IMG/VR virus record: IMGVR_UViG_3300027844_001828
Coordinates: 1-64,000 of that record
Length of the DNA stretch: 64,000 nt
Direction: 5' to 3' (one strand)
Under the pieces are notes generated by a model. It did no database searches. It was given only the letters and a program-made list of their open reading frames with translations, and was not told where the DNA came from. Every line of letters begins with the position of its first letter. The stretch's first letter is position 1. The position numbers and the translations under genes are program-made. Below, piece after piece: positions 4,987-57,459 of this stretch.

Positions 4987-4993
4987 GGAAATC

Positions 4994-22904: not shown

Positions 22905-25900
22905 ATGATAGTTCTTTCTTCATTCCAGGTAAACACAACAGGAACATGTGACAATGAAAATGTCATATTGACATCCAGTGGAGACCCTGTTGCCTCATGG
23001 AAGCAAGATGGGGATTTGAAAGTAAGGCTCTCCAAAGACGGTCTGTGGTACACCATTGACGATGTTGGAGTGTCACCATCAAATGATGTGAAGATTGGCT
23101 TGTCAAGCAATGGGAATTATCTTCTTTTCTATCTTTCATTGACAACGTTAAGATGTCTCGAATACGATTTCACAAATTCAAACTTCAGAGCCCCAGTAAC
23201 CGTAGCGACAGGAGTTGATATTTTTGAAGCCACAAGAAACGCCCCTTCTATCACGGTTGCGTATACGCAGACGAATAAAATTTACACTGCGACGAGAGAT
23301 GAAGATAGCAAAGTCTGGAATACTGGCGCACTTGTGGTTACTGAGACGGGATCTATTACGGACCTTTCAATTGATGGTGAAACTGGGTATACGGCAATTG
23401 CGTATTCAATTGGGGATGAGATTGATGTTTATCAGTCAGTAGACTCATCCCCATTCAGTAGAATTATATCGACCGGAGTTTTGGCAAATGTAAACTTAAG
23501 GTCTGTTAGTGCGTCAAGCTTTGATCTCGTCTATACAGAGAGTCTTGGCGGCGGTAATAATTCAATAGAGCATGTCAGGCGAGACATCTATGTCGATTGG
23601 GCGACACAGATTGTTGACGCCACAAATGATAACAACAACGTGGATCTATACTCCGAGTCTCTAAAAGCCTATGTTGTTTGGGTAGAGGGCGGAAAGGTTC
23701 GATACAGAGAAAGGGCCGACGACAATTCTTGGAGCAATCTTGTCGGGTCAACTGAGATCGATACGTGTGACGCTGACAGCGAGCCTAAAATATTGTTCTA
23801 CGCCAGTTACGCAAGAGTTTTGTATAAGAAGAGCGGCGATGTTTATTATGCTGGGATGACACCAAATACCCAAAACATTGTTGGTAATTTTGGCGCTTCA
23901 TCATGGGGCGGGACAAAGCACATTGATAATAGTGCAACAGCGATAAGATCAAGTTTGGTTGAGAATAGGATTTCTCAAAGGATCATATTCACTCAGAAAG
24001 AATTGAGCATTGGTGGTGTCTCGTGCTATTTGAAAAATAAGTCGAGTGACGCGGACGTGACCTACACATTGTATATGGACATATATTATTCCGATATCAG
24101 TGCGAACCCATACTCTACACCTCTCGCAACAACGTCTATTGCCTCGTCAGCTATCCCAGATCAAGGTTGGGCCGAGTTCGATTTTAATTTGAGCGACCTT
24201 GCAATACCATTGGACGGATATTGTTTTGTAATGAGTCAGGTTGGTGGAGATGAGAATAATTACGCCTCATGGCTCTCCTTTAAGGATGGCGGAACGGGGT
24301 CAAAGGTAAGTAATGATGAAACCACATGGGATTTGGTTAATGGATTCACACGTGGAATCATGATCAAGGGTAATTTTGATCCGTATGCCAACATAATAAA
24401 TGTTGACCCCGCAAAGATAACTAATGAACTGGTTACCCCGCCTGCGGTTTTGTCAACTGTTAAGCAGATTGAATTGACCGACCTTAATGAAGGTCTCTTC
24501 GACGGGACAAAGCTCGTTAACTTTGGATCTCCAGCTTATGGTCAGGTGATTGATCAGGACGAAAGGATATCTGGATACACAGGAACGGATGAAGACTGGA
24601 GAGTCGTTCTCTCAGACAAGAATCTTATTTTATCATTTGTCGTAGATAGCTCTGGTAGCTGCGGGTGGAATGACGTTTTTGGATTGAGAAAAAGCTTGAT
24701 GAATAAGATTATCGCGAGACTAAAGACCAAAACTACCGGTCAGATACTTTTTGATTTTGTAAAATATGGTGGTATGTTAATTGATGACGTGTCAGTTAAT
24801 CTAACCAAGAAGGTTAGAGGGGTAATAGCATCAATAGATGATGTAAAATCTGTCTCAGGATTCGATTCAGATGGGAACCCTATAGACTCTACAATAAATC
24901 CCAGAGAGCATTTGAGGACAGGGGTCATTGCTTATGGATACAAGGCTCTTAAAACGGGAACCACGTATCAGGCCAGAGGCGTGAAACTTGGATGGAAAGA
25001 CATTTTCCATAGATCAGTAGAGTCGAATTGGCATGATTTTTGGAAGGTGGATTCCCCTACACTTAGCGTTGCTACGAATGGCCCTGAAAGCGAAACGGTA
25101 TTGAACATTGCTCTCACCGATTCGGCAAAGGACGCAACAAGATTTTATGCTGCGAATAGTGATGATGATTCCAGGTCTTTCCTTGAAACAGATCTCGCAT
25201 CCGGTTCATTAGACACTGAGGTTTTTGACTCTACAGGATTTGAGGCCGACAGAAGAATAAATGTTTTAGATAAGGATTCTATAAATACGTATTTCATTGT
25301 TGAGTCGGTAGATTCGGTAACGGACATCATAACAGCAGAGCAACAGTCTAATTATAGTTTGACAGCTGCCGGAGCAGTCGTAGAAACAATCAGGCCATTA
25401 TTTGTTCAATCGGGGTGGGAAGCGACAGACTCTATGGAGTTCTTCATTAAAGACGGAGAGAGTAAGGGCGCAATAATATTTTTCATCCAGTGCCTTAATG
25501 GCGCACATATGGAATGGGAAGTTACCCCGTTGGCCGAATGGTCTTCTTCCAATCTTTATTTCATAGATGAAACGGCCAAGTTCGATGTCGATGCTGTCAA
25601 CTCTCAGGGAGAGAACTTGCCAGACGGAACCCTTGTTGAGTTCTATGTTGATAAGCCACCGCCATTAGGTTCTGACGAATTAACCGCTGATGGACAAGCG
25701 TCTTCGGCGCAGGCGTCATATGATTTGTCGCAAGACGCATTAGACGGGTCTTCAGTAATCTATTTGGGCTCTACGGCTATAACGGCTCTTAGTAGGAATG
25801 ACAAGGTCGAGATAATAGATTCCAACAAAACCTATACAAGCGCACAGGGGAGTGGCGGTCCTCACTACTCATTTGTTTCAGAGATAAACGCTGATGACGG

Positions 25901-28900
25901 ATACATTATAATAACAGATTCGCTCGAAGATGATTTTTTGACAGTGGACAGTGCGAAGCTGGTTTTTCCCGCGACAGAAATAAGGGAAAACGACTTCCCG
26001 CTAAAGACGGAAATAGATATTCATGCGAATATTGTAAACGTCACCCCCACATACATTGGGAGAGAATTGGATAGCGGACTATACGACGGGCTTGATAAAA
26101 AGAGATCTGCTGTGGCGGACGGGTATGATGATCACAACGCTGACAATGAATATGTCTACAGGGACTCGGCGGAAATGCTAACGACAGATGGATATTCCGC
26201 CCTTAGAATTTTACCAGTTACGGAAGATAATTTCTTAAGCAAAGACTTGAAAGAAGCAGCCGCGAATTCAATCTTTGGGTTGACAGACCGAGAGAAAGTT
26301 AATGCGGATGCAGAACCTGGAGGTTTAGAGTCGGAAGATGAAACAGCCGTGGCCCTATCCTCGGATGATGATACGGCGAAGTACTTCGAGCCACCCGCCG
26401 ATTTTGTTATGGACCATAGAGTTAGCGTTTTCGGCGGGGAGGCAAGCACAACGATGAAGTCATTCGCCTCAGAACTCTATGCCGAAACCATCAATGGAAG
26501 AACATACCTTGCGAAGAGCTATGAGGTGTACACCGCAATGACATTTTTCAAAGAGAATGGGAATATTCTTGCACAGTCGATGCTCCCATCCTTCACTGTT
26601 AGTTTCGCCTCCCCAATAAGAATGGGGAGTGAAATAAATAAAACGACCACATACAGTTGCCCACCAACAGAGCACGGCGAAGAAGAGTCTAATCAAATTG
26701 TTTCTGGAACATTTGCGACAGATGAAGACTCTGTCGTGGTAACTTACAATATTGATGATAGGGATTTCCCATTACCGAATGGCGTTATAGAAGTTTACGT
26801 TTATGATGGGATGAGAGATGAAGACAATGCAAATGTTACTGATGACGACATCGGGGAGCCAAATGGTTGTGACGACAAATTGTCAAGCGCAGGCGGAACG
26901 CTAATTTATGTTGGTGAAAATTCGACTTACGATTCTGATATTAGTAAGTATCTACTTGCCGACTCATATCTTGACCCATTTAGTTTCGAGTCAAAACAAA
27001 CCTTAGTTGTTGACAATGGTGTTGCGACTCTGACGCTTCCAGCAATTGATAGAGTCGCTAAATTTGTTATCCATGCCGTTTATGAGATCGAAGAGGGTAA
27101 GAGGGTCGTTCATGAGCAGACTATTTACTACAGAAGCCCTCTGGTTATCGAGTACACAGGGCCAACAACACTTGTTGCGGATGGCTCTTCTGTTTACAAT
27201 TTGAGCGCCTCGTTAGAGTGGAGAGGAACTGACAACGTAGACGATGGAACAATCGTCAACTTTTCAGCAAGTGGTGGGGATTTAACCCCTTCAGTAAGTG
27301 AGACCGTAAGTAATATTGCCAGCGGTGTGGAATACCATCCAAACTTACAATACGGAGTGGAGATAGTTTCAGACGATGAAGAAGCCCAGTCTTTAAGTCA
27401 GAATTTTGCGGATAGATTGTCGGGCGAGGAATCAACAGAGTCGAGGTCTATAGTTATCACCGCAACGTATCAGGGGTTCTCAGGAAGAACAAGTGCGACG
27501 TTGAATATTAACGACACAGAAGATGGGACTGGGGATTTCTTTTTCTATTGCTCAGTAGATCCGGCAGAAATATACTCGGATGGTGAAGACCCTTCAATGG
27601 TGGTTGCTGACCTTCAGGAATCTACGAATAGAGGGTTCCCGTTCATTGAGGTGGTGGGAGAGGACCTTGTCGAGAGCAATATTGGTTGTTTGTTTAATGG
27701 GCCTGGAATAACTGTAGAGAACAGACTGGCCAGATGGACTGATGATTTACCTCCAGACGGAAGCTTCGCAACTCCGGATGACACCCCGTGGTATGCATGG
27801 AATAGGATTACGGCAAATGAATTCATTGGTAGACCAAAATACTTCCCACCAGGGAGGCCAGGGTCTCCGCCAGCTTGTAATTCGCCAGCTTGTGTTTTAC
27901 TTAATGTTTACACAAGGTCTCAGAAGTTCAATTCTTTTGGGAGAGGAATAGATAGCTTCACTGTTTCCTTCTTGTCTTCAACAATAACTGGAGTCGCAAA
28001 AATTCCAAAGCCAAGGATCGAATTGAAAGAACCCCTTGGCATAGACGTTTCATTTGAGCCAATTGATAGAACTGAATATCAGACTACGGCTTGGAGGTCC
28101 ACGCCACTTGGAACTCACCCGTCTTCTCACTATATTGATGAATACAACCATCCAATAAGAAGAGATGGGTCCGCCAAACATTATGTTGTAGCCGAAATAA
28201 CATGGAAGGACAAGTATATTGTTGGCACGGCTCAAAACCCACTTCCAAAAGTTACATTCACTTCGGGCGAACTCGACGTGAACAGTGAGAACCAGTCATA
28301 TGATGTTTCGTTCACGGAAAATGACGACTACAGTCTTGACACAACAGAAGCTCAGGTTTCTATAGCGAGAACAAGTTTTGACGAAAGTCATTATCACGTT
28401 TGCTATGTTGATGCTAATGGAAAAGGGTTGACAACGGAAACTATAGTGTTCGAAAAAGGGGTGACAGTCGCAGATCATGTGCATGCGATTGATCTTAATG
28501 CTGAAGAAGTAATATCTTACGAGGTGTTTGATAAGGTTGTTACAAATGAGAGCGGATCAGATGTCGAAGCCGCCGTTAACCATACTCACAGTCCAAGGGC
28601 GGTTGCGATAATATCTACTGGATCAACAAGCGATATTAGCCTACCCATAGCTGTTAAGGGCGAAGTCACATATGACAATGGTGTATTGCTTAATAATGGC
28701 AAGAGAGTGGTCAGGACTCTTGAGAACTACGCCTTGAGCAAGCCGGAGAAGAAAACGGATTCTGGATCTGTATTTACAGAGCAATATTTCCTTGAAATCA
28801 TTCCCCCACAACAGAAGGTTGAAGACGGATTAGTTCCTGGGATATTGACATCGACAAATAAATCTAAGCCCGGCCACACTATTGCTTATCATGCGTGGAA

Positions 28901-31184
28901 GCAGGATGATGAAGGAAATCTACTTCCCCTTCCAGATGGAACGAGGATATTGACGAGCTTCAAGTTTTATGAGCCAGAAGCCACAGAGGGGCAGACTGAC
29001 AATTCAACATCGGGCGTTATCAATGTTGAACAGTCAATAAGGCAAGACTATGCAATCATGGAAGTTAACGCAAGAATAACAGGTTTGCCGATTGATGTGA
29101 CTGCGAAGATGCAAATAATTATTCAGAGCGATACTAATTGGTTCCCATATATTAACAATCCTATATTTGACAAGCCAACAGCGGATAGTTTGTACTTAAC
29201 TCAGGCTATCGATTCATTGACAGAGTTTGGAGCAAGCCAAATGAATGACGCGCTTGCTCAAGCGGCAAGCAGATTGATAACGGCGGAAGAAACGTATGCT
29301 GGGTGGGTTAAGGCTGTCGTCCTGATATCTAATGGAAGCGAGAACACCTCTGACGTTTCTTATTCTCAAGCAGCAGCTGCGATAAACTCTATTGATGGCG
29401 ACGGGGAGGTCCCAATATTCGCAATCAAGTTAGCGGACACAGATAGCTTCGACACGGTCGTAATGCAAAAAATGTCCAAATTAACATCTGGTGAAATGTT
29501 CAAGATTGGTCAGATTGTTGGAACCGTTGACGCTACGGCTACAGCCGTGGTCAATTCCATCCTCGCGTTAGACAAGTTCAACTTGTTAAGTGGAAAATAT
29601 ACGAACACAGTGGATCTTGGGGAAGACAAGTATTATGAGACGATAAAATTCAATGTTCTTCTTGAGGCTGGAACCTCAATCAAATTCAGAGTTAGATTCA
29701 GCGTCGATAATGTAACGTTTGGGGAGTGGGTGGAGCTTGATACGGCGACATACTCAGACGCCATTGGAAATATCATCCAGACGCACTCCATAGACCTTTC
29801 AAGCATAACTGATTTTTCCAGATACATGCAATATGAAGCGACTATGTTTGGGAACGTGACTACGTTTAAGTCGCCACAGATTCAAAGCATCAACACAGAT
29901 TATTATGAGCCTGGAGAGTACGTTTTATTCTTTCAGCCAATTGAGTTGGAAGGGAACGATGAATTTATTGGAGAGATTATATTTGTCCATGAAGGAACGG
30001 TTCCCACCACATCATCAGTCAAGTATGGTTTAACACACGATATTACATCTGATTTTAATTCTGAATATTCATCAACAGAGCAGCCGTTGTTTAGTTCCGG
30101 CAGATCCGCAATAGTATTGTCGAGGGTTAACGAAAAAACAACGACTGTTGATTATAAGAATTACTATGCAATAAATGGAAGATGGAACGATTCTTATGAA
30201 GTGGATGTCTACAGGGTTTCCGAAGATCAGCCAAAGGGTATCATTGTCCCAGATGGAGACTACTCGGTAGAAAACGCTGAGGGCCTTATTACGTTTATTT
30301 CAGCGCAGCCAATATCTAATGAATTCAATCTTGTGATAAAGCTAAACCCCTATTTTAAGCCAGCTATCGAGATGAGAAACTTCAAGCCAGAATCGGTGGT
30401 CTTGGATAACGTTTCGTTTATCTACAATGTAGTTGATAAAAACGATCTTTTCCCAGCTAATGATCATCGAGATGTCACTGGGCTCGTAGAAACCGATGTG
30501 ACCCCTTTAGGATCACTACAGGGAACGTTAGATGACGGGTTTGTAGTCTCCAACGCCAACGTCGGAAGTGACCAAGACATTTCAATTGATTTCGCAGAAG
30601 TCAGGATTGACGATAACAATGTTTCGTACTTCTGGCTTTTGACAAACTCTACTGGTCCGTATGTAGTAGAGATGCTGACGAACTTGACCAAGGTTGTCAC
30701 CCATACATTTACGGACGGGCCAACATATACTCCAATATCAATGTCGTTTGATGAGGATAATTGGTATCTTGTCGAAAGGACTTCGACAGGGTTGAAAGTA
30801 CACAAGTATGATTCGTTATTTAACTTTATAGTATCCAGTGTTCACTTAGTCGGATTCTTAAAGACGGATGATAGCTTCAAGAACATCAGAAGATTTGATT
30901 CTAAATGGTATGTTACCGAAAGCGACAGGCTCCATATCTTAAATCAGTCGTTCACAAGCATTAGCGAGATTCTCCTTCCGGTTAAGACTTCAGGGCCATT
31001 TTCGGTTGATTCAGAGAACGCCTGGATTGTTTCTAGCTTGAAAGATGTGGTGTTTGGTGTTACATTATCTGGAGCCTCAGTAGGATATTATGACGCGAAT
31101 CAGGCTGTGATTCTAAATAATTTATCCAGATTGTCAGACTTATTCTATAAGGTAAAAGATCAAAAAATCATAGAACTAACGTAA
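22905..31184 (+). CDS. Giant virion adhesin-like protein (2759 aa) with an interrupted vWA domain and invasin-type Ig-like (Big_1-like) domains
   Basis: vWA start 'LILSFVVDSSGSCGWND' and later vWA end 'GASQMNDALAQA...KAVVLISNG...PIFAIKL...LTSGEMF'. Big_1-like 'TTLVADGSSVYNLSASL...DGTIVNFSASGG'. HxH module near 28386. Confidence 0.65.
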   Translation: MIVLSSFQVNTTGTCDNENVILTSSGDPVASWKQDGDLKVRLSKDGLWYTIDDVGVSPSNDVKIGLSSNGNYLLFYLSLTTLRCLEYDFTNSNFRAPVTVATGVDIFEATRNAPSITVAYTQTNKIYTATRDEDSKVWNTGALVVTETGSITDLSIDGETGYTAIAYSIGDEIDVYQSVDSSPFSRIISTGVLANVNLRSVSASSFDLVYTESLGGGNNSIEHVRRDIYVDWATQIVDATNDNNNVDLYSESLKAYVVWVEGGKVRYRERADDNSWSNLVGSTEIDTCDADSEPKILFYASYARVLYKKSGDVYYAGMTPNTQNIVGNFGASSWGGTKHIDNSATAIRSSLVENRISQRIIFTQKELSIGGVSCYLKNKSSDADVTYTLYMDIYYSDISANPYSTPLATTSIASSAIPDQGWAEFDFNLSDLAIPLDGYCFVMSQVGGDENNYASWLSFKDGGTGSKVSNDETTWDLVNGFTRGIMIKGNFDPYANIINVDPAKITNELVTPPAVLSTVKQIELTDLNEGLFDGTKLVNFGSPAYGQVIDQDERISGYTGTDEDWRVVLSDKNLILSFVVDSSGSCGWNDVFGLRKSLMNKIIARLKTKTTGQILFDFVKYGGMLIDDVSVNLTKKVRGVIASIDDVKSVSGFDSDGNPIDSTINPREHLRTGVIAYGYKALKTGTTYQARGVKLGWKDIFHRSVESNWHDFWKVDSPTLSVATNGPESETVLNIALTDSAKDATRFYAANSDDDSRSFLETDLASGSLDTEVFDSTGFEADRRINVLDKDSINTYFIVESVDSVTDIITAEQQSNYSLTAAGAVVETIRPLFVQSGWEATDSMEFFIKDGESKGAIIFFIQCLNGAHMEWEVTPLAEWSSSNLYFIDETAKFDVDAVNSQGENLPDGTLVEFYVDKPPPLGSDELTADGQASSAQASYDLSQDALDGSSVIYLGSTAITALSRNDKVEIIDSNKTYTSAQGSGGPHYSFVSEINADDGYIIITDSLEDDFLTVDSAKLVFPATEIRENDFPLKTEIDIHANIVNVTPTYIGRELDSGLYDGLDKKRSAVADGYDDHNADNEYVYRDSAEMLTTDGYSALRILPVTEDNFLSKDLKEAAANSIFGLTDREKVNADAEPGGLESEDETAVALSSDDDTAKYFEPPADFVMDHRVSVFGGEASTTMKSFASELYAETINGRTYLAKSYEVYTAMTFFKENGNILAQSMLPSFTVSFASPIRMGSEINKTTTYSCPPTEHGEEESNQIVSGTFATDEDSVVVTYNIDDRDFPLPNGVIEVYVYDGMRDEDNANVTDDDIGEPNGCDDKLSSAGGTLIYVGENSTYDSDISKYLLADSYLDPFSFESKQTLVVDNGVATLTLPAIDRVAKFVIHAVYEIEEGKRVVHEQTIYYRSPLVIEYTGPTTLVADGSSVYNLSASLEWRGTDNVDDGTIVNFSASGGDLTPSVSETVSNIASGVEYHPNLQYGVEIVSDDEEAQSLSQNFADRLSGEESTESRSIVITATYQGFSGRTSATLNINDTEDGTGDFFFYCSVDPAEIYSDGEDPSMVVADLQESTNRGFPFIEVVGEDLVESNIGCLFNGPGITVENRLARWTDDLPPDGSFATPDDTPWYAWNRITANEFIGRPKYFPPGRPGSPPACNSPACVLLNVYTRSQKFNSFGRGIDSFTVSFLSSTITGVAKIPKPRIELKEPLGIDVSFEPIDRTEYQTTAWRSTPLGTHPSSHYIDEYNHPIRRDGSAKHYVVAEITWKDKYIVGTAQNPLPKVTFTSGELDVNSENQSYDVSFTENDDYSLDTTEAQVSIARTSFDESHYHVCYVDANGKGLTTETIVFEKGVTVADHVHAIDLNAEEVISYEVFDKVVTNESGSDVEAAVNHTHSPRAVAIISTGSTSDISLPIAVKGEVTYDNGVLLNNGKRVVRTLENYALSKPEKKTDSGSVFTEQYFLEIIPPQQKVEDGLVPGILTSTNKSKPGHTIAYHAWKQDDEGNLLPLPDGTRILTSFKFYEPEATEGQTDNSTSGVINVEQSIRQDYAIMEVNARITGLPIDVTAKMQIIIQSDTNWFPYINNPIFDKPTADSLYLTQAIDSLTEFGASQMNDALAQAASRLITAEETYAGWVKAVVLISNGSENTSDVSYSQAAAAINSIDGDGEVPIFAIKLADTDSFDTVVMQKMSKLTSGEMFKIGQIVGTVDATATAVVNSILALDKFNLLSGKYTNTVDLGEDKYYETIKFNVLLEAGTSIKFRVRFSVDNVTFGEWVELDTATYSDAIGNIIQTHSIDLSSITDFSRYMQYEATMFGNVTTFKSPQIQSINTDYYEPGEYVLFFQPIELEGNDEFIGEIIFVHEGTVPTTSSVKYGLTHDITSDFNSEYSSTEQPLFSSGRSAIVLSRVNEKTTTVDYKNYYAINGRWNDSYEVDVYRVSEDQPKGIIVPDGDYSVENAEGLITFISAQPISNEFNLVIKLNPYFKPAIEMRNFKPESVVLDNVSFIYNVVDKNDLFPANDHRDVTGLVETDVTPLGSLQGTLDDGFVVSNANVGSDQDISIDFAEVRIDDNNVSYFWLLTNSTGPYVVEMLTNLTKVVTHTFTDGPTYTPISMSFDEDNWYLVERTSTGLKVHKYDSLFNFIVSSVHLVGFLKTDDSFKNIRRFDSKWYVTESDRLHILNQSFTSISEILLPVKTSGPFSVDSENAWIVSSLKDVVFGVTLSGASVGYYDANQAVILNNLSRLSDLFYKVKDQKIIELT

Positions 31185-31198
31185 AACCAGCAACTTAT

Positions 31199-32752
31199 AT
31201 GATAATAATATACGATAAAAAAAGCAGGGTGATCGTTGAGAGCCTTACCACAAACTCAGAGGGCGAGCTACCCTCTTCAGACTCTTTGTCTAAGATGTAT
31301 CCAAAAAGTTATAAGAGACTTCTTTGCTGTAACATGGAAATCCCGACAAATATAAGTGTTGTTGGAGCGACGATTGAAATAAAATCTGAGATTCCTTTCA
31401 AGATTTTCAAAGACGATTCGATAGTGTTTGAGTTGACTATAAAAGAGTTCGATCAGAAGCTCAAAAACAAGCGAGAAGAAAGAAGAAACAGCATGCTTGT
31501 AAACTTTCCGTGCGTATTCTCCAAGAAAGGAGTGAGCGGATTCACAGATCAACTTTCACGCTTGCCACAAACCTTTGATGAAATTGGGTTGTCGATGCGA
31601 GATGGTAGTTATTTTGAAAAGGGGTTGATGAAGGTTGGTTGGTGGGGAACATTCATGGATGCTGGCGGCTATGCCAACATGAATCGCGAGATAACAAGAA
31701 GGCTACACAACTATAGGATAATCCCCTATGTTAGAACTTACGCGACCGCCTGTCAGATTGACCCACCTGCTGCTGACTTATTCAGGCAATACGAAGATAT
31801 GAAACCTAAAAAGGGCGATCACCCATTTGTATATGCTTACACTCCGATGGCTCACACTTACCATGGCGGTAAGCGTGTCTTTTTTACAATGATGGAGACC
31901 TCATCTTTACACTCTGTGTTTGTAGACCATTGCAATAGGTTTAGTGATGAAGTCTGGGTCCCGTCTGAGGCTAACAAGGAGTTATTCAAATCAGAGGGTG
32001 TAAAAAAGAGAATCAGAGTTGCCCCACTTGGCATTGATGAAATCATATACTTTAAACAAAGTGTTCCGGTTAAGAAAATAAATTCCTACAAGAGTTTGTT
32101 TGGACCAAAGGTGGAAGATGGCGTGAGGGATTTTAAGTTCCTAACACTGATTCAGTGGAACTTTAGGAAAGGCTATGACGCCTTGATAAAAGCCTTCGTT
32201 AATAAGTACACGGCAAAGGATGATGTCTGCTTAGTCTTTGCCACACAATATTCATTTGACACGGTGTACAACGACTTGAAAAGACATTTACCAAGGAATA
32301 GTGATCTTCCACAGGTTGTCCTGTATAATGACATAATCCCGACAGTAGACATGCCGGGGTTCTACAAAAATTTTGATTGTTATATTCATATGTCAAGAGG
32401 TGAAGGTTTTAGCTTGACTCAAATTGAAGCAGCCGCATGTGGGTTGCCAGTAATATCTAATTGTCATTCTGGGATGACTGAGTATCTCACAAAAGAAAAC
32501 AGTTTCATGATCGACTGCAAAGAGGTTGAGAAGTGTTGCCCAGAGCTTGGTAGCGTTTGCTATTTTTACCAAGGTCAGTACTTGTGGAAAGTTGGAAAAA
32601 AACAAATTAACCAGGCTTCAGAATATATGGATTACGTTGTTAATAATTACGGTAATGCGAAGAAGAAAGCGGAAGTGTTCCATGATGACGTAATAAAAAA
32701 TTATACCTGGGAATTAACCGCAGAACGGATAGCATCATTGCTCAAGAGTTAA
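31199..32752 (+). CDS. Glycosyltransferase family 4 (GT-B) with ~140 aa N-terminal extension
   Basis: 'RKGYDALIKAF' and 'SRGEGFSLTQIEAAACGLPVISNCHSGMTEY' are the GT4 signature; 'DEVWVPSEAN...PLGID' also fits. Confidence 0.9.
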   Translation: MIIIYDKKSRVIVESLTTNSEGELPSSDSLSKMYPKSYKRLLCCNMEIPTNISVVGATIEIKSEIPFKIFKDDSIVFELTIKEFDQKLKNKREERRNSMLVNFPCVFSKKGVSGFTDQLSRLPQTFDEIGLSMRDGSYFEKGLMKVGWWGTFMDAGGYANMNREITRRLHNYRIIPYVRTYATACQIDPPAADLFRQYEDMKPKKGDHPFVYAYTPMAHTYHGGKRVFFTMMETSSLHSVFVDHCNRFSDEVWVPSEANKELFKSEGVKKRIRVAPLGIDEIIYFKQSVPVKKINSYKSLFGPKVEDGVRDFKFLTLIQWNFRKGYDALIKAFVNKYTAKDDVCLVFATQYSFDTVYNDLKRHLPRNSDLPQVVLYNDIIPTVDMPGFYKNFDCYIHMSRGEGFSLTQIEAAACGLPVISNCHSGMTEYLTKENSFMIDCKEVEKCCPELGSVCYFYQGQYLWKVGKKQINQASEYMDYVVNNYGNAKKKAEVFHDDVIKNYTWELTAERIASLLKS

Positions 32753-32754
32753 TT

Positions 32755-33396
32755 ATGATTGGACTTGGTTTAATAACTTTGAATGAAGAAGAGTATGTCG
32801 AAAGATGTATCAAGAGCGCCGAGGGGCTCTATGATGAATTAATAGTTCTTGACCACTTCTCTTCAGATAGGACGGCTGAAATATGCGCCGATCTTGGGGC
32901 GCAAGTCGTTCAGGCCAAATGGATTCACGATTTTTCACTCGCCAGGAACCAACTAAATAATTTATTTACCTCTCCATGGATATTTCAGATGGACGCTGAT
33001 GAACATCTTGAGGGGGAAAAGTTAAATTTATTGTCACATGCAGTTGAAATATCAGAAAACCAGGGTATAGTAGCATGGTCCTTGTTAAGGAAGAACCATT
33101 ATCCTGATCATGATGCAGGATCTCCGTTTTTTGCGGCTCCGTTTTACCCGGACCCGCAAGTGAGACTGTTCAAAAACCAACCTGAGATATATTGGAGTGG
33201 AGCAGTTCACGAAGGAGTTTCTCAGGCGATTACAGAAGGGAATATTGGAACAATAGGACGCCTTTCTGTTTGTCTTCACCATCACATGTTCCGAGGAAAC
33301 CAAGAAAAATACGAAGACTTAAAAGGACAATATTACAGTAACATTCAACAAGGAGTTTTCCATGAAGATGGCCACCCGACTAATAAAGTCAACTGA
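32755..33396 (+). CDS. Glycosyltransferase family 2 (GT-A; WaaE/SunS/flagellin-GT-like catalytic domain)
   Basis: 'LITLNEEEYVERCIKS...ELIVLDHFSSDRT', 'DFSLARN', DxD motif 'MDADE', 'VRLFKN...WSGAVHE'. Confidence 0.9.
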   Translation: MIGLGLITLNEEEYVERCIKSAEGLYDELIVLDHFSSDRTAEICADLGAQVVQAKWIHDFSLARNQLNNLFTSPWIFQMDADEHLEGEKLNLLSHAVEISENQGIVAWSLLRKNHYPDHDAGSPFFAAPFYPDPQVRLFKNQPEIYWSGAVHEGVSQAITEGNIGTIGRLSVCLHHHMFRGNQEKYEDLKGQYYSNIQQGVFHEDGHPTNKVN

Positions 33397-35644
33397 ATTA
33401 GAATTTCTCAATGCCTACAAGCATGAATTGTACTCAAAGGGCTCTGACATTTCAAAGTCCTGGAAGGTAGGCGAGAACCTCGTTTTTGTCGTTGGAGACG
33501 AAATCGCTGGTTTTGCTAACGTTCTTGGAAGGTCTTATCATAGCGATGAGGAATTGTGGCCCGGAGTGACGAAGCCGTTCAGGTTGCCTATAGATTTTAT
33601 AAGGGTTTTCCCCGTTGGTGATAGACCGACATTCTCAGGGTCGGTCCACAAAAATATGCTTATAGAAATATATGGTAAGAATAATTGGGGCCATGTTTTT
33701 GTAAACAAGCACTCTCTCCCAGACCATGTCAGCAAGAGCCTTCTCACCGAGTTGAAAGGGCTCAGAAACATGAGCGAAAAAGTAGACTTCTCATTGGACA
33801 TCTCAATCTCCAATGAGATAAAATCTATCACTGAGAAAATTCAGAGAAAGGCCAAACAAAGTATGAACCAAGACAAAGTTGACTATGAAGAGAAAAGGGA
33901 GACGCTTGTTTTCCGAATGCTTGAATTTGTAAGAAACGATCCAGAAAGGTTGGAGAAGCTTAAACATAAATCTTTCCTTAAGTCACTCGACGAGTCGGAA
34001 AACAATTACTTCAGAGAAGTCAAATACGCTGACGTAAAACATGATGTTAAAGAATTAATGTCAATTCAGGGATTATTCAGACCCAAGTGGAAAGAGTATG
34101 GCCCAGGAACATACGTAGTTGTTGGCGACTCTCATGGTGATCATGCGGAAGCTGGGGTGTTCTCTCTTGTCCAATCATTAAGCGAATACATCGGTGCCGA
34201 TAATGTATTCCATATTGGACATATATTGGATGATAATGAAATAATCAACGAAGACTTGGTGAGAATAAAAGACCTTGTTGTTATTTCAAGGGTGGAAGAG
34301 TCGCCACAGATTGAAGAGTTTTATGAAGACAACTCAACCGGTGACACCGAGCCATTTGAAATTATTCAAGAGGGCGTTTTACTTGGTAATGTAAAGGTCG
34401 CTAATCACGATCTTTCAAACGACTATATGAGTACGAGAGCGGATAGCAAAACAGTAAATAGGAAGGTATTTGAAGAGTCTTCTATTTTGAGCGGGCACAG
34501 ACATGAAATATCCAATACTGCCACAAATGATGATCAGAGAGTCGTCTCTGGATTTCCAGGATGCTTGTGTGAAAATCACGTTTCATCAAATTCGAGAAAG
34601 CCAAGATACAGACAAGACATTCTCGAAAAGTTCTTGAAAAAGAACCCGTGGCATTTGAAAGCCAATAGAAGAAGGATTACGATCAAGGAAGAGTGGGAAC
34701 AGGGCGTTTTTGTTGTCAATGTAAGCGCGGACTATTCACATACGATTGTTCCATGCCGAATCAAAAAAGTAATGATTGAAGGAAGAGAAAGATTTGCCAC
34801 GAGTTACTTCGACAAGATCATTTCTGAAAACGCAGTTCATGAGCCAGACAAAAAGATTTTCGTCAATGGTGATGTTCACGCTCCGCTTCAAGACTCGCAG
34901 GTTCTCCACATTCAGGACCAAGTAGTGAAGGACTACCAACCAGATATTTATGTCAACATCGGAGACATAAGAAGCAGCGAGGGGTTGAATCATCATATCC
35001 TTGATCGTGGAGAGATTCCTAATGAGACCCTCATTGAAGAATCCACTTGCGTCTATCATCTTCTTAAAATGATGTCTGAATGGGCACCTGAAAAGCATGT
35101 CTTGTTTGGAAATCATGAAAGATTCGCTTGTGACTTTATAAAGAAGAACCCTCAATTCGAAGGGCTCATTGATTTCAACTTTATGTGTGGAGTAGAAAGA
35201 CTTGGGTATAATCTTGTTCCGCATCAAGGAACTCTTGAGATTGATGACGTTGTATTCGTCCATGGAGATATCTTGAGAGGTGGAGCGGCAGCGATGGATA
35301 AGTACGCTTCTGCGTTCCCCGACAAGACGGTCGTTTTGGGCCACAGTCACTATCCTGCAATAAGGTCTGAAGTGTACATGATGGGTCTCACCGGATTGAG
35401 AGATCAGGGATACAATGAGAAATCAATAACGAGATGGTGCCATGGATTAGGTTTTGTAAATACCTTCAATGGGGTATCCTGGGCCACATCCATAGCTATT
35501 GAAAGACATTCGATAAGCATAAATGGGAAAAAATATTCCTCAGACGACGATGGTTTTTGGAGGACTTATCGGTATAAAACAGAATTAGTTTATATACCAG
35601 AAGACCCCGAAAGCGAGTTAGATGATGAATTGGCACTTGAATGA
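33362..35644 (+). CDS. EVE/PUA-like domain fused to two calcineurin-like metallophosphoesterase domains
   Basis: N-terminus 'WKVGENLVFVV..EIAGFANVLGRSYHSDEELWP...PFRLPIDF' is EVE-like. MPE1 has GDSHG / GHILDD / NHD / GHRH. MPE2 has GDVH / GDI / GNHE / HGD / GHSH. Confidence 0.7.
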   Translation: MKMATRLIKSTELEFLNAYKHELYSKGSDISKSWKVGENLVFVVGDEIAGFANVLGRSYHSDEELWPGVTKPFRLPIDFIRVFPVGDRPTFSGSVHKNMLIEIYGKNNWGHVFVNKHSLPDHVSKSLLTELKGLRNMSEKVDFSLDISISNEIKSITEKIQRKAKQSMNQDKVDYEEKRETLVFRMLEFVRNDPERLEKLKHKSFLKSLDESENNYFREVKYADVKHDVKELMSIQGLFRPKWKEYGPGTYVVVGDSHGDHAEAGVFSLVQSLSEYIGADNVFHIGHILDDNEIINEDLVRIKDLVVISRVEESPQIEEFYEDNSTGDTEPFEIIQEGVLLGNVKVANHDLSNDYMSTRADSKTVNRKVFEESSILSGHRHEISNTATNDDQRVVSGFPGCLCENHVSSNSRKPRYRQDILEKFLKKNPWHLKANRRRITIKEEWEQGVFVVNVSADYSHTIVPCRIKKVMIEGRERFATSYFDKIISENAVHEPDKKIFVNGDVHAPLQDSQVLHIQDQVVKDYQPDIYVNIGDIRSSEGLNHHILDRGEIPNETLIEESTCVYHLLKMMSEWAPEKHVLFGNHERFACDFIKKNPQFEGLIDFNFMCGVERLGYNLVPHQGTLEIDDVVFVHGDILRGGAAAMDKYASAFPDKTVVLGHSHYPAIRSEVYMMGLTGLRDQGYNEKSITRWCHGLGFVNTFNGVSWATSIAIERHSISINGKKYSSDDDGFWRTYRYKTELVYIPEDPESELDDELALE

Positions 35645-37733
35645 AGTATTTGGGCAGCAGCCACATAAAGATACTTCAACAATTAATTTTTACTTATTTT
35701 TATCAAATGGGGAGTATTGGGTTGAGACAATCGACACCAATTACCCCATGGGATATATAGAAAGTGAATTCACCAAACAGTTAATCAGCATGAACACCGC
35801 TGAGTACGGAACAGACCAGTCCGTATTGACCATTTTGCGTAAGAGATTGACCCCAACTTCCGCCTTGCATCTAATATTTGACCGAGATAAGGCTGATTTA
35901 TACCTCTCAGAAGACAATAAGCAGCTTCTGAAGGCAAATCGTGGCGAAGACGGGTATCGAATCGCAACCTTAGCCTTGAAGGCGCTCGGTGGCTGGCTGG
36001 TAAGTGATGATCAACCTAAGACCAACTTATTTGGTGAATTAGATAAAAGTTCACTGTCCCTCGTCTCAAACAATAAGTTCTGGATAAATAAAAATTTCTC
36101 CATATATTCACTTATGGATTTTCCAGCAATAATTTCGTCCTTAGAGAATTCTGGTAAAGAGTGGAAAGGGATGGAGACAGCGAGTATTTTCATCTTTGAT
36201 TACAATGATGAGCAGATACGGGAAGTTATGGAGAAGCAAATAGGGAACGGGTTTCTTGATAGAGATGCTAGCCTGTGCTTGCTAAACTTCAATATCGGGA
36301 GATTTGAGGTCCAGTCGCCATCTATTATTGTTGACTCGAATGAAAAGGGAATCTTTGAGATTCAAAACGCTATAAAAGACGTATTGTTGAAAAAGATTGG
36401 TGTTACGGGACTACCATTAATGAAGGCGAGATCTGAGGCCGCTTTTAATAGCGGGTACAGTGTTCAGGATATTTACTATACGTCTTTCAAAGACGCGGAG
36501 CATGATCAGGCCATATCTAACGCATTCAATAGCGGCCCTAACAAAGAAGCCAAGGCTAAGATGGCAAAAATATTCAAGGATTATAAAATTTTCCTTGGTG
36601 ACACTGAGATGAGAAACTTCTTATTGAGCTTTTTTATTTTCAAAGAGATATTCCCATTGTCAGACGCCGCAAAACAATACAAGACTTTTTTCACTATTAT
36701 CGGAATGGCAAAACCACCCGGAGCGCCGGGGAGAAATCCCTCAGTAAACAACCAGGAAGTATTTGACGCTATCTTCACTGCCGTTGGAGACCCCGTTGTC
36801 GGAGAAGACAAATTATATTACCTTATATCTTCAAGGTTTTGTTTCCCAAAGAGGGTGTTTTCTTTATTTTTCAATGTGAACGATTCCTCTGATGCCACAA
36901 TGCATGATGTGATCGAGTTCAATCAGAAGAATGGGATGGTATCTGGGTACAGTTTGACCGAGGGCGAGTCTGATACGACTCAAGATGAAAAAGCGTTTTA
37001 CAACCTTAAAGTAGCGCCACATATGCAGAAAGCTGTTATTGCCAAACTTGGAGATAAGGTCAGAGACAATCGGGTGGATGAAAAAGTAATGATTAAAAGC
37101 TTGTCTGAATTTCCAGATGCGCATTCTCAGATCTTACAGTCTTTTGAATCCTACGGAGTTGAGTATCAAGACATTAATGTTATCATGACATTTTCCCCCG
37201 GCGAGGCAGGGCAGGTAGCTGGTTATGCCAGTAACACATTCAATGATCAGGAAGCGGTGTCTCTGGCTCGGGGGCACAGGGACTTTAAGATGCCATTTAT
37301 CATTATGAACACTGCATCGCCGCAGGTTTCAAATAGAGAGAAGATGACATCAATATTGATTCATGAGGCGGATCACTACTTGCATGATATGCTAATACTA
37401 AAAGGAGAACTTGATAAATCGTTTAACGACATCAAGGGCGGCAGCGATGCAAAAACGCACAAGGAGCAAATCCAAAACCATCTTGAGTATTTGAGATCAC
37501 CATCTGAGACGGAGGCCCACACGGTTGAGGCGCTATCCGTTCTTCGAGCATTCTCTGTCCCGTACCTTATCAAAAACTGGCATACAATAAAAAGTAAGAT
37601 TATAGCAGAGGAATTTGAAGTCAAAGGAGAGCTTGCCTACCAAGTAGTCATCAAAGAATATTCTGGTTTCGTCGAAGAGGCGCTAAGAAGATATATTAAA
37701 GAAGTTGAAGTCTCAAATCCCCCACCTGAGTAA
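35622..37733 (+). CDS. Large protein (703 aa) with C-terminal HExxH zincin-like metallopeptidase motif
   Basis: 'ILIHEADHYLH' followed by 'YLRSPSETEAH', a downstream Glu-ligand pattern. The N-terminal ~500 aa are unrecognised. Confidence 0.55.
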   Translation: MMNWHLNEVFGQQPHKDTSTINFYLFLSNGEYWVETIDTNYPMGYIESEFTKQLISMNTAEYGTDQSVLTILRKRLTPTSALHLIFDRDKADLYLSEDNKQLLKANRGEDGYRIATLALKALGGWLVSDDQPKTNLFGELDKSSLSLVSNNKFWINKNFSIYSLMDFPAIISSLENSGKEWKGMETASIFIFDYNDEQIREVMEKQIGNGFLDRDASLCLLNFNIGRFEVQSPSIIVDSNEKGIFEIQNAIKDVLLKKIGVTGLPLMKARSEAAFNSGYSVQDIYYTSFKDAEHDQAISNAFNSGPNKEAKAKMAKIFKDYKIFLGDTEMRNFLLSFFIFKEIFPLSDAAKQYKTFFTIIGMAKPPGAPGRNPSVNNQEVFDAIFTAVGDPVVGEDKLYYLISSRFCFPKRVFSLFFNVNDSSDATMHDVIEFNQKNGMVSGYSLTEGESDTTQDEKAFYNLKVAPHMQKAVIAKLGDKVRDNRVDEKVMIKSLSEFPDAHSQILQSFESYGVEYQDINVIMTFSPGEAGQVAGYASNTFNDQEAVSLARGHRDFKMPFIIMNTASPQVSNREKMTSILIHEADHYLHDMLILKGELDKSFNDIKGGSDAKTHKEQIQNHLEYLRSPSETEAHTVEALSVLRAFSVPYLIKNWHTIKSKIIAEEFEVKGELAYQVVIKEYSGFVEEALRRYIKEVEVSNPPPE

Positions 37734-47090: not shown

Positions 47091-47343
47091 ATTCGAAGGA
47101 ATAGAAGTGATAGATGATGGCCCGGATGTTTATTCCAGGAGTAAGGACGGTAGAATCATGTTTAGATTTAATAGAATAGACGGGACGTTTGCCCTGTTCA
47201 GATCTACAAGAATCAGCGATGCAGAAAAAGAGTTCACGTTGATAATGTTTGATAAGTTGAGCAATGATATGACCGAGACGAGTAGAGAAGATGTAAAATG
47301 TGCATTAGAGTATAAACTTGAAAAGGACCTATTTTGCACATGA
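47080..47343 (+). CDS. Hypothetical protein
   Basis: GGAG SD upstream of ATG 47080; its stop overlaps the next ATG (ATGA). Confidence 0.55.
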   Translation: MENRFEGIEVIDDGPDVYSRSKDGRIMFRFNRIDGTFALFRSTRISDAEKEFTLIMFDKLSNDMTETSREDVKCALEYKLEKDLFCT

Positions 47344-54700: not shown

Positions 54701-54759
54701 GGTAATTTTTTATGATAATTTCTGGGTTTTCAGGTATCGGTGTGATTATAAGAGGAGGG

Positions 54760-56690: not shown

Positions 56691-56708
56691 TTCAGATAGT
56701 ACGCTTCC

Positions 56709-56730: not shown

Positions 56731-56736
56731 TAACAA

Positions 56737-57444: not shown

Positions 57445-57459
57445 AACAAGGAGTAGACA

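What the first reader, a model, noticed from the sequence alone, without database searches (positions are those of the whole stretch)
31199..33396. Candidate virion-glycosylation system: GT4 plus protein-type GT2 at the end of the fibre operon
Seen: two GT genes follow the last giant fibre gene with 14 nt and 2 nt gaps, so they are probably co-transcribed late. The GT2 has the 'DFSxARN...DADE...RLF...WxGxVHE' signature. Known: that GT2 subgroup includes flagellin glycosyltransferases, SunS and WaaE, and virion glycosylation by phage GTs is known in some mycobacteriophages. The genome also has an HddA-like heptose kinase (45105) and Ser/Cys tracts (15347). Inference: the phage decorates its own fibres or capsid with sugars, perhaps heptose, for shielding or receptor mimicry. 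Alternatives are host LPS/S-layer conversion or DNA glycosylation.
Basis: partly seen in the sequence, partly recalled or inferred. Interest (0 to 1): 0.72.

Follow-up and report, generated by a model that had tools for sequence, protein, structure and literature searches.

The report
Candidate virion protein-glycosylation genes, marine jumbo phage
A marine jumbo phage carries two soluble sugar-adding enzymes directly behind its giant tail-fibre gene; they most likely decorate serine/cysteine-rich linkers in the phage's own fibre and adhesin proteins, which would take virion glycosylation beyond the mycobacteriophages where it was first shown, but nothing here proves what they modify.

Summary
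ORFs 31199-32752 (517 aa, GT4) and 32755-33396 (213 aa, GT2) follow the 2759-aa giant gene with gaps of 14 and 2 nt. Both keep their catalytic motifs, and they are the only GT4 and GT2 genes in the 235.6-kb phage genome.

The GT2's only good matches among solved structures are protein or peptide glycosyltransferases: GmaR (flagellin O-GlcNAc), ThuS and SunS.

GT4 is a conserved core gene. It sits behind the orthologous giant in all 14 related loci with the same gene order. The slot after it holds a GmaR-like GT2, an unrelated GNT-I-type GT, or nothing.

The giant has three invariant HxH motifs, a fibre hallmark.

They use mixed codons and recur at the same place in orthologues of 22-27% identity.

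No known route to glycosylatable DNA bases was found (no ThyA-like, TET/JBP or C5-methylase gene). No membrane Gtr-type features were found either.

The heptose idea fails: gmhA and hddC are absent, and the kinase is missing from a 97%-complete relative that has both GTs.

The gene string does not end at the GTs, and late expression is untested.

Verdict: virion protein glycosylation is the best reading, at about 0.45. It is plausible and testable but unproven.

The parts
31199..32752 (+). GT4 glycosyltransferase (517 aa). Residues 1-143 (nt 31199-31627) form a lineage-specific N-terminal domain with no recognisable relative. Residues 144-517 form the GT-B catalytic core, with the EX7E motif at nt 32402-32428.
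   Evidence: Pfam. AlphaFold model with pLDDT 94. Foldseek and VIA top match is chlorovirus B736L (3oy2), Z 32.4, covering residues 144-517 only. The N-domain is unmatched. Invariant E402, E410, R323 and K324.
32755..33396 (+). Minimal GT2 (GT-A) glycosyltransferase (213 aa) of the GmaR/SunS/ThuS kind. It has no C-terminal substrate-recognition domain.
   Evidence: Pfam. PDB phmmer: GmaR 22ao, E 1.3e-15, residues 5-204; ThuS 7msk; SunS 7msp. NCBIfam SunS 64.6 bits against a cut-off of 350. Invariant D80, D82, E83 and E153.
22905..31184 (+). Giant fibre-like structural protein (2759 aa) directly upstream of GT4. HxH motifs lie at nt 28389-28397, 28476-28484 and 28581-28589. A VWA-like block starts near nt 29307.
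   Evidence: Conserved at 25-47% identity over about 2400 aa in L001, L004, L015, L009, L010, L098 and L106. Its only three HxH motifs are all invariant in 8 homologues. Acidic and Ser/Thr-rich. No Pfam, PHROG or PDB match.
15897..22901 (+). Second giant structural protein (2334 aa), conserved upstream of the 2759-aa giant.
   Evidence: Homologues occupy the same position in L001, L009, L010, L015, L098 and L106. No family match.
12239..15790 (+). Modular tail-region protein (1183 aa). Two Ser/Cys linkers (nt 15338-15460 and 15731-15781) flank a C-terminal module of about 95 aa. This is the candidate glycosylation acceptor inside the window.
   Evidence: Its orthologue in G001 (27% identity over 945 aa) has a 92-aa Ser-rich tract at the same C-terminal place.
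4943..7771 (+). Baseplate-hub-like tail protein (942 aa). It places the upstream block in the tail module.
   Evidence: PHROG 1887 'tail protein', E 1.6e-6; PHROG 196 'baseplate hub', E 8.6e-4. This evidence is weak. No PDB match.
33362..35644 (+). Double metallophosphoesterase protein (760 aa) that overlaps the end of GT2 by 35 nt. It follows the GT slot in every relative. Its role is unknown.
   Evidence: Pfam Metallophos and PHROG 221. Two motif-I sites. Synteny.
35622..37733 (+). Conserved 703-aa protein with an HExxH motif near its C-terminus. It overlaps the preceding gene by 23 nt. Its role is unknown.

Best explanation
GT4 and GT2 are soluble cytoplasmic enzymes that use the host's common nucleotide sugars to glycosylate the phage's own structural proteins before or during assembly.

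The retaining GT4 is the conserved enzyme of the lineage. I infer that it places sugars on Ser residues of the Ser-rich linkers that join the modules of tail, fibre and adhesin proteins. GtfA and SdgB, both GT4 enzymes, do this on bacterial serine-rich adhesins. Its unique N-terminal domain (residues 1-143) would dock it to its substrate.

The inverting GT2 is a stripped-down relative of GmaR, SunS and ThuS. It would either add a second kind of sugar directly to Ser or Cys side chains or extend the first sugar.

The slot GT2 occupies is exchangeable between lineages, which would diversify the glycan. The resulting mucin-like linkers would be stiffened, protected from proteases and shielded.

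Shown here:
- Enzyme families, intact catalytic motifs and absence of transmembrane segments.
- Conserved position behind the giant fibre-like gene.
- The Ser/Cys linkers and their conservation in orthologues.

Inferred:
- The acceptor, the sugar, the order of the two steps and the timing.
For: 1. GT2's only significant solved relatives glycosylate proteins or peptides: GmaR E 1.3e-15 over residues 5-204, ThuS 5.5e-14, SunS 6e-13, and the next hit at 0.004. The best NCBIfam hit is SunS.

2. GT4 lies directly after the orthologous giant in all 14 same-order related loci examined, down to 33% identity. In one of them it even hosts an intein beside the EX7E region, as highly conserved phage genes tend to.

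3. The giant has exactly three HxH motifs, all invariant in 8 homologues. HxH pairs are the iron sites of trimeric phage fibres (PMC11705849).

4. The genome has 15 Ser/Cys tracts (478 residues, 68% Ser, 12% Cys) in five modular proteins, against about 1 expected from within-protein shuffles. All six Ser and both Cys codons are used, so the selection is on the protein. The tracts sit exactly at module boundaries.

5. Orthologues in G001 at 22-27% identity keep long Ser tracts at the same places. In lineages with GT4 only, the giant next to GT4 carries 2-6 tracts.

6. Neither GT has a transmembrane segment, and these are the only GT2 and GT4 genes in the genome.

7. No ThyA-like, TET/JBP or C5-methyltransferase gene was found.

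8. GT4's closest structure is a chlorovirus GT, Z 32.4 against 29.5 for the next match.
Against: - No glycan has been observed, so every link to an acceptor is circumstantial.
- Gene order is conserved across the whole clade, so adjacency to the giant may be inherited rather than functional.
- Ser tracts follow the clade and GT4, not the GmaR-like GT2. Cys content does not follow GT2 either: 12% in this phage against 1% in G001, which also has GT2.
- GT4's fold matches are generic and include LPS, teichoic-acid and small-molecule enzymes.
- GT2 lacks the TPR-like recognition domain of GmaR and SunS.
- Poly-Ser linkers can be plain flexible spacers.
- The GT4-GT2 complex prediction gave no answer.
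- The genes immediately downstream are enzymes and replication genes, so 'late structural operon' is not established.
- I had no GT-free control set of phages with which to test the tract-GT association.
Confidence: 0.45

Rival explanations
1. The enzymes convert a host surface structure. They would modify a host envelope glycan (LPS core, capsule, teichoic acid, S-layer glycan) or a host surface protein such as flagellin or pilin during infection. That would block superinfection or stop progeny from adsorbing to debris.
For: GT4's structural neighbours include WaaG, TarM, PimA/B, PglA and HepE. GT2's closest solved relative, GmaR, glycosylates a host-type substrate, flagellin. Soluble phage-encoded GT-A enzymes of this general kind are known to modify teichoic acid (TarP, discussed in bioRxiv 10.1101/2023.12.21.572611). 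A variable second-GT slot is also what selection for surface-glycan diversity would give.
Against: There is no Gtr-type membrane partner and no transmembrane segment, and no sugar-nucleotide or flippase genes. GT4 is a fixed core gene with an intein in one relative, embedded in the structural and replication backbone of a lytic-looking jumbo phage lineage, rather than a movable moron. This reading does not explain the Ser-tract trait.
Confidence: 0.27
2. The enzymes glycosylate phage DNA, adding sugars to modified bases to escape restriction.
For: Phage DNA GTs have both GT-A and GT-B folds, resemble LPS and teichoic-acid enzymes, and can lie next to structural genes (bioRxiv 10.1101/2023.12.21.572611). 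The GTs border the replication module, and a dCMP deaminase lies 11 kb downstream.
Against: All known routes start from a hydroxylated pyrimidine made by a ThyA homologue or by a C5-methyltransferase plus TET-like oxygenase. None of PF00303, PF12851 or PF00145 is found in the 235.6-kb record. GT2 matches GmaR and SunS, whereas the DNA GT-A enzymes are described as resembling TarP and JGT. T4 beta-GT is absent from GT4's top 50 structural matches. One caveat is that the record is about 93% complete.
Confidence: 0.06
3. The enzymes act on some other soluble acceptor, such as a small molecule, a nucleotide signal, or a non-structural phage or host protein, as a metabolic or counter-defence function.
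For: GT4 also passes the Pfam 'GT4-conflict' model (36.7 bits). GT4's structural neighbours include small-molecule GTs (BshA, MshA, TreT, LmbT, SenB). The conserved downstream partners are a double phosphoesterase and an HExxH protein of unknown role.
Against: The GT4-conflict match is only the C-terminal part shared with all GT4 enzymes and scores lower than the generic models. Nothing in the neighbourhood points to a particular metabolite. GT2's affinity for protein GTs is unexplained by this reading.
Confidence: 0.17

Closest known systems
Mycobacteriophage virion glycosylation (Che8, Corndog, Myrna; Freeman et al. 2023, known to me only as cited in PMC12619734)
   Same: Phage-encoded GTs lie beside structural genes, and the proposed product is a glycan coat on virion proteins built from host sugar nucleotides.
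   Different: In those phages the glycans sit on C-terminal extensions of the capsid and tail-tube subunits of small temperate siphophages of Actinobacteria. Here the setting is a 236-kb marine jumbo phage. The candidate acceptors are Ser/Cys linkers in fibre and adhesin proteins. The GT4 has a novel N-domain. No glycan has been shown.
GmaR (Listeria flagellin O-GlcNAc transferase) and the SunS/ThuS S-/O-glycosyltransferases of glycocins
   Same: GT2 aligns with the GmaR GT domain over its full length and with the N-terminal halves of SunS and ThuS. It shares the DFSxARN, DADE and xHE motifs.
   Different: GT2 is 213 aa, the bare catalytic domain. It lacks the TPR-like C-terminal domain that recognises MogR or the peptide substrate. 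It falls far below the SunS equivalog cut-off (64.6 against 350 bits).
GtfA/GtfB (accessory-Sec serine-rich-repeat adhesins) and SdgA/SdgB (Ser-Asp repeat adhesins)
   Same: GT4 enzymes that put sugars on long Ser-rich tracts of modular surface adhesins, with further GTs extending them. This is the working analogy for GT4 plus the Ser-rich linkers.
   Different: Sequence similarity is only family-level (GtfA 21 bits, SdgB 16 bits, Gtf1 E 0.02). There is no GtfB-like partner. The add-on domain is N-terminal, not an inserted DUF1975.
Chlorovirus glycosyltransferase B736L (PDB 3oy2) and chlorovirus capsid glycosylation
   Same: It is the best structural match of the GT-B core (Z 32.4, 340 residues aligned), and it is a virus-encoded cytoplasmic GT4.
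   Different: Identity is 16%. B736L's own acceptor is not given in the entry title. It comes from a eukaryotic virus and has no N-terminal add-on domain.
Phage DNA glycosylation clusters (T4 alpha/beta-GT; ThyA- or MT/TET-dependent GT clusters)
   Same: Phage-encoded GT-A and GT-B enzymes, sometimes near structural genes.
   Different: The defining precursor enzymes are absent from this genome.

Membership tests
CAZy GT4 / Pfam Glycos_transf_1 (retaining GT-B) | Score above the curated Pfam cut-off | tested here: met
   48.9 bits against 26.4; Glyco_trans_1_4 scores 49.4 against 27.
CAZy GT4 / Pfam Glycos_transf_1 (retaining GT-B) | Two-Rossmann GT-B fold | tested here: met
   Model pLDDT 94. 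VIA Z 24-32 to many GT4 structures over residues 144-517.
CAZy GT4 / Pfam Glycos_transf_1 (retaining GT-B) | EX7E motif with both glutamates | tested here: met
   E402 and E410 are invariant in 60 homologues.
GT2 / Pfam Glycos_transf_2 (inverting GT-A) | Score above the cut-off, and a DxD metal/nucleotide motif | tested here: met
   47.8 bits against 23.3. D80-A-D82 is invariant in 45 homologues.
GmaR/SunS/ThuS protein-peptide glycosyltransferase subgroup of GT2 | Catalytic domain closer to this subgroup than to other GT2 enzymes | tested here: met
   GmaR E 1.3e-15 over the full length, ThuS 5.5e-14, SunS 6e-13; the next PDB hit is at 0.004.
GmaR/SunS/ThuS protein-peptide glycosyltransferase subgroup of GT2 | C-terminal TPR-like substrate-recognition domain | tested here: not met
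   The protein ends at residue 213. Only the N-terminal 85-200 residues of the 335-430-aa SunS and ThuS chains align.
GmaR/SunS/ThuS protein-peptide glycosyltransferase subgroup of GT2 | NCBIfam SunS equivalog cut-off | tested here: not met
   64.6 bits against 350.
GmaR/SunS/ThuS protein-peptide glycosyltransferase subgroup of GT2 | Demonstrated Ser/Thr/Cys acceptor on a polypeptide | not testable with these tools
   Needs an enzyme assay or MS.
Phage virion glycosylation system (mycobacteriophage type) | GT genes next to virion structural genes | tested here: met
   GT4 starts 14 nt after the giant HxH-motif protein, and this position is conserved in 14 related loci.
Phage virion glycosylation system (mycobacteriophage type) | Glycans detectable on virion proteins | not testable with these tools
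   No isolate exists; the phage is known only from metagenomes.
GtfA/SdgB-type Ser-repeat adhesin glycosylation | Ser-rich repeat substrates encoded in the same genome | tested here: met
   15 tracts in 5 proteins, conserved in orthologues.
GtfA/SdgB-type Ser-repeat adhesin glycosylation | Equivalog-level similarity to GtfA or SdgB | tested here: not met
   GtfA 21.2 bits against 574.6; SdgB 16.2 against 800.
D-glycero-D-manno-heptose (HddA) pathway | HddA equivalog score | tested here: not met
   100 bits against 600. HddA-type kinases are nevertheless the nearest solved relatives (E 4e-23).
D-glycero-D-manno-heptose (HddA) pathway | GmhA isomerase and HddC nucleotidyltransferase present | tested here: not met
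   No PF13580 or PF00483 match at E <= 0.1, while both searches hit the control genomes.
Phage DNA glycosylation | ThyA-homologue hydroxylase/hydroxymethylase, or C5-MT plus TET/JBP oxygenase | tested here: not met
   No PF00303, PF00145 or PF12851 match in the whole record. The record is about 93% complete.
Gtr-type seroconversion (GtrA/B/C) | Membrane-embedded bactoprenol GT with flippase and serotype-specific partner | tested here: not met
   Maximum 19-residue Kyte-Doolittle mean is 1.24 (GT4) and 0.61 (GT2), so no transmembrane segment. Neighbouring genes show no Gtr families.

The most novel reading that the evidence does not exclude
This marine jumbo-phage lineage builds mucin-like glycosylated stalks. 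A conserved GT4 with a private docking domain O-glycosylates poly-Ser linkers of fibre and adhesin proteins. In this phage a SunS/GmaR-like minimal GT2 additionally S-glycosylates the many Cys residues in those linkers. That would be the first S-linked glycosylation of a structural protein rather than a bacteriocin, and the first virion glycosylation system outside actinobacteriophages.
Probability: 0.12. Interest if true: 0.85.

Novelty: new variant of a known kind. Interest (0 to 1): 0.58.

Why it matters
Virion glycosylation by phage-encoded enzymes has, as far as I could find, been shown only for a few mycobacteriophages. There it shields particles from antibodies.

If this system works as proposed, the phenomenon would be widespread in uncultured marine, sediment and peat jumbo phages. 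It would also have a recognisable genomic signature: a long-form GT4 behind the giant fibre gene, an exchangeable second GT, and Ser-rich linkers.

That signature gives a concrete substrate hypothesis that can be tested with a few recombinant constructs. It bears on phage stability, protease resistance, host recognition and particle stickiness in the ocean.

A SunS-like enzyme acting on Cys-rich structural linkers would also extend S-glycosylation beyond glycocins.

Tried and rejected
- **Heptose pathway.** Rejected. No gmhA-type SIS, HddC-type nucleotidyltransferase or epimerase was found. The kinase is far below the HddA cut-off and is absent from G001.

- **DNA glycosylation.** Made unlikely by the absence of ThyA-like, TET/JBP and C5-MT genes.

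- **A GT4-GT2 physical complex.** The prediction gave 'no answer' (score 0.00). This is not evidence either way.

- **GT2 specifically coupled to Cys in the linkers.** Not supported. G001 has the GT2, but its tracts are 1% Cys against 12% here. Lineages with GT4 only also have Ser tracts.

- **Identity of GT4's N-domain.** Atlas feature and structure searches gave only noise (best 0.57, TM 0.40). VIA aligns nothing before residue 115.

- **Fold of the giant.**
  - AlphaFold on residues 1700-2759 with 8 homologues gave pLDDT 50, so I ran no fold search on it.
  - The Atlas search of residues 1-2000 gave only weak Ig-like, BACON and lectin leads.
  - Pfam, PHROG, PDB and INPHARED found nothing.

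- **Promoter and terminator scan.** Uninformative.

- **Metatranscriptome contigs.** Only a few 150-270-nt pieces, which could be DNA carry-over.

- **Close relatives among isolated phages.** None.

- **'Moraphage' paper (PMC12619734).** It describes another jumbo lineage with four core GT families. I could not link it to this genome.
Full report
**What the window is**

The window is the first 64 kb of a single 235,624-bp IMG/VR virus record. CheckV rates it 93% complete, and no terminal repeats were found. Nearly all large ORFs lie on the + strand (my own whole-genome ORF pick gave 235 of 278).

The same 5.9-kb stretch is present at about 100% identity in at least nine seawater or marine metagenome runs, and partly in others. 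This is therefore an uncultured marine jumbo phage. No isolated phage in INPHARED is close.

**The observation**

ORF 31199-32752 (517 aa) and ORF 32755-33396 (213 aa) follow the 2759-aa ORF 22905-31184.

Pfam places the first in Glycos_transf_1/GT4 and the second in Glycos_transf_2. Both score well above the curated cut-offs, and PHROGs agrees.

GT4 keeps the EX7E motif. E402, E410, R323 and K324 are invariant in 60 homologues.

GT2 keeps DFSLARN, DADE, RLF and WSGAVHE at residues 59, 80, 137 and 147. D80, D82, E83 and E153 are invariant in 45 homologues.

These are the only GT2 and GT4 genes in the genome.

One correction is needed: the GTs are not at the end of the gene string.
- A 760-aa protein with two metallophosphoesterase motifs starts 35 nt before the GT2 stop.
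- A 703-aa protein with an HExxH motif overlaps that gene by 23 nt.
- A UvsW-like helicase, DnaB and primase follow.

Structural and replication genes are interleaved further on. For example, a tail-tube-like gene at 54712 lies between the topoisomerase and the clamp loader. 'Late operon' is therefore an assumption. Terminator-like hairpins are no more frequent than in shuffled sequence, and the RNA-library contigs are too few to help.

**What the enzymes are**

GT2 against all PDB sequences gives three strong hits:
- GmaR's glycosyltransferase domain, E 1.3e-15, aligned over residues 5-204.
- ThuS, E 5.5e-14.
- SunS, E 6e-13.

The next hit is at 0.004. The best NCBIfam model is SunS, but at 64.6 bits against a cut-off of 350.

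GmaR O-GlcNAcylates flagellin (named as flagellin glycosyltransferase in PMC9638930 and PMC3150276). From my own knowledge, SunS and ThuS S- or O-glycosylate Cys or Ser of glycocin peptides.

The protein is only that domain, however: the TPR-like recognition part of GmaR and SunS is missing.

GT4 modelled at pLDDT 94.
- Residues 144-517 are a standard GT-B core. Its best structural match is the chlorovirus NY-2A glycosyltransferase B736L (Foldseek E 1.1e-15; VIA Z 32.4 against 29.5 for the next match). The rest of the list is generic GT4: HepE, GlgM, BshA, TreT, PimA/B, PglA, TarM, WaaG.
- Residues 1-143 form a small beta domain plus a long helix. No relative was found.

Neither enzyme has a hydrophobic segment that could span a membrane.

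**Comparative genomics**

About 40 metagenomic homologues of GT2 (47-64% identity) and more than 200 of GT4 exist.

I compared the window with 14 related loci that carry the long-form GT4 in the same gene order. The order is the same wherever the flanks were recovered: 2334-aa-type giant, 2759-aa-type giant, GT4, an optional second GT, the phosphoesterase protein, the p703-like protein, small genes, helicase, then DnaB.

Contents of the second-GT slot:

| Second-GT slot | Loci | GT4 identity to window |
|---|---|---|
| GmaR-like GT2 | window, L001, L002/L015, L004, L100 | 43-52% |
| Unrelated 231-aa GNT-I-family GT-A (Pfam 28-37 bits, cut-off 25.4; no BLAST similarity to this GT2) | L009, L103, L108 | ~33-34% |
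| Nothing | L010, L098, L101, L102, L106, L104 | 33-38% |

Supporting calls are 64, 96 and 97.

In L104 the GT4 gene carries a Hint/LAGLIDADG intein just before the EX7E region. Inteins characteristically sit in highly conserved sites of important genes. The helicase of L098 has one too.

A more distant locus, L016 (30% identity), has a different context, with a 1300-aa multi-GT protein nearby.

Shorter GT4 homologues that lack the N-domain head large multi-GT and epimerase clusters in phages of 150-550 kb.

So GT4 with its private N-domain is a fixed core gene of this lineage, always behind the giant. The partner GT is exchangeable.

**Is the giant a fibre?**

It has no Pfam, PHROG, PDB or isolated-phage match. 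My model of residues 1700-2759 was poor (pLDDT 50), so I did not search with it.

Several things do point to a tail or fibre module:
- The protein is conserved over about 2400 residues, at 25-47% identity.
- It is acidic and rich in Ser/Thr.
- Its only three HxH motifs in 2759 residues (1829-1831, 1858-1860, 1893-1895) are all invariant in eight homologues. They are spaced 29 and 35 residues apart. Paired HxH motifs are the iron-binding sites of trimeric phage fibres such as T4 gp37, and are common in marine phage fibres (PMC11705849).
- A 942-aa gene upstream has weak PHROG matches to tail and baseplate-hub proteins.

I accept 'tail/fibre module', but as an inference.

**The Ser/Cys tracts**

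The two (nt 15338-15460 and 15731-15781) flank a C-terminal module of about 95 aa.

Genome-wide there are 15 such tracts, 478 residues in all (68% Ser, 12% Cys), in five proteins. Within-protein shuffles give about one. The five proteins are:
- the 1183-aa protein in the window;
- a 556-aa protein with a 113-residue tract;
- a 1362-aa protein made of four tandem beta-helix modules of about 330 aa (Pfam Beta_helix);
- a papain-family protease;
- a 553-aa protein made of four copies of the same ~100-aa module that ends p1183.

The tracts lie exactly at module boundaries. They are written with all six Ser codons and both Cys codons, so selection acts on the amino acids, not on a DNA repeat.

In G001, a 255-kb, 97%-complete relative that has GT4 and GT2, the pattern repeats:
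- The p1183 orthologue (27% identity) has a 92-residue Ser-rich tract at the same C-terminal place.
- The orthologue of the 556-aa protein (22% identity) has a 93-residue tract.
- At least six more proteins carry tracts.

In the lineages with GT4 only or with GT4 plus GNT-I, the giant next to GT4 has 2-6 tracts in its N-terminal ~320 residues. A small ORF between the giant and GT4 often has one as well.

By contrast, two unrelated huge phages with short-form GT4 had one strict pattern match (a single Ser-rich site) in 296 kb and none in 488 kb.

The tracts therefore follow the lineage and its GT4. They do not follow the GmaR-like GT2, and Cys content does not follow GT2 either (12% here, 1% in G001).

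**Alternatives**

*DNA glycosylation.* Every described route needs a hydroxylated pyrimidine. This is made either by a thymidylate-synthase homologue (5hmC, 5hmU, 5hoC; PMC13326640) or by a C5-methyltransferase plus a TET-like oxygenase (bioRxiv 10.1101/2023.12.21.572611). None of PF00303, PF00145 or PF12851 is found in the record, although the searches for PF00303 and PF00145 matched the control genomes. About 7% of the genome may be missing, so I keep a small probability.

*Heptose.* The GHMP kinase is nearest to HddA/WcbL-type kinases but far below the equivalog cut-off. No isomerase, nucleotidyltransferase or epimerase is encoded. G001 lacks the kinase altogether. The kinase is not part of this system.

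*Host conversion.* This cannot be excluded. GT4's fold neighbours include LPS and teichoic-acid enzymes, and GmaR's substrate is a cell-surface protein. However, there is no membrane component. The gene also behaves as a fixed backbone gene rather than a moron.

**Mechanism I commit to (confidence about 0.45)**

This is a cytoplasmic protein-glycosylation module acting on the phage's own tail, fibre and adhesin proteins.
- GT4 is the conserved initiating enzyme on Ser-rich linkers, by analogy with the GT4 enzymes GtfA and SdgB on serine-rich adhesins. This is an analogy, not membership.
- The exchangeable GT-A, here a GmaR/SunS-like minimal GT2, adds or extends sugars.

The acceptor, the sugar and the timing are inferred, not shown.

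**Novelty**

Phage virion glycosylation is known from mycobacteriophages (cited in PMC12619734). My literature searches found nothing on Ser-rich linkers plus GTs in phages.

If true, this is a new variant of a known kind, with a distinctive and searchable genomic signature.

Noticed in passing
G000 (whole genome) 103505-105175 (+), 134140-138228 (+), 138723-139928 (-), 177810-179471 (-); window 12239-15790: Five modular proteins are joined by long Ser/Cys low-complexity linkers written with mixed codons. One is four tandem ~330-aa beta-helix modules, one is four copies of a ~100-aa module, and one is a papain-family protease. This 'beads on a string' architecture is unusual for phage proteins.
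   Followed up: yes
window 28389-28397, 28476-28484, 28581-28589: Three invariant HxH motifs, the only ones in the 2759-aa giant, are spaced 29 and 35 residues apart. They look like the iron-binding sites of trimeric phage fibres. A VWA-like block follows near nt 29307.
   Followed up: partly
L104:1363-4221: In one relative the GT4 gene is interrupted by an intein (Hint plus LAGLIDADG homing endonuclease) just before the EX7E catalytic region. The helicase of L098 (16519-18591) also carries an intein.
   Followed up: partly
window 45105-46196 (with 44576-45133 and 46200-47090): An HddA/WcbL-like GHMP sugar kinase overlaps the end of a dCMP-deaminase gene and is followed by a 296-aa protein with no match anywhere. 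The kinase is absent from the related phage G001. Its substrate and role are unknown.
   Followed up: partly
window 33362-35644 and 35622-37733: A 760-aa protein with two calcineurin-like phosphoesterase motif-I sites and a 703-aa protein with a C-terminal HExxH motif are translationally coupled to the GTs. They are conserved in every relative. Their function is unknown, with only a weak PHROG hit to 'DNA transfer protein'.
   Followed up: partly
L098:9606-9995, L106:9663-9998, L104:892-1359: In the GT4-only lineages a small ORF of 106-155 aa with its own Ser-rich tract sits between the giant and GT4. It might be a dedicated small substrate.
   Followed up: no
L008:10001-20943, L099:10001-20732: Short-form homologues of GT4 open large glycan gene clusters in phage contigs of 150-550 kb. 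The clusters hold a ~1050-aa triple-GT2 protein, GT6, further GT2 genes, a methyltransferase and sugar epimerases.
   Followed up: no
window 47334-49535, 56737-57444, 55596-58635: The phage encodes a ClpB-like double-AAA chaperone, a sigma-70-family factor, and a bacterial-type clamp loader and beta clamp. A tail-tube-like gene (54712-55503) is embedded among these replication genes.
   Followed up: no
window 31185-31198 and 32753-32754 versus 33346-33361: No Shine-Dalgarno-like sequence precedes the GT4 or GT2 start codons. A clear AAGGAG lies 6 nt before the start of the next gene at 33362.
   Followed up: no
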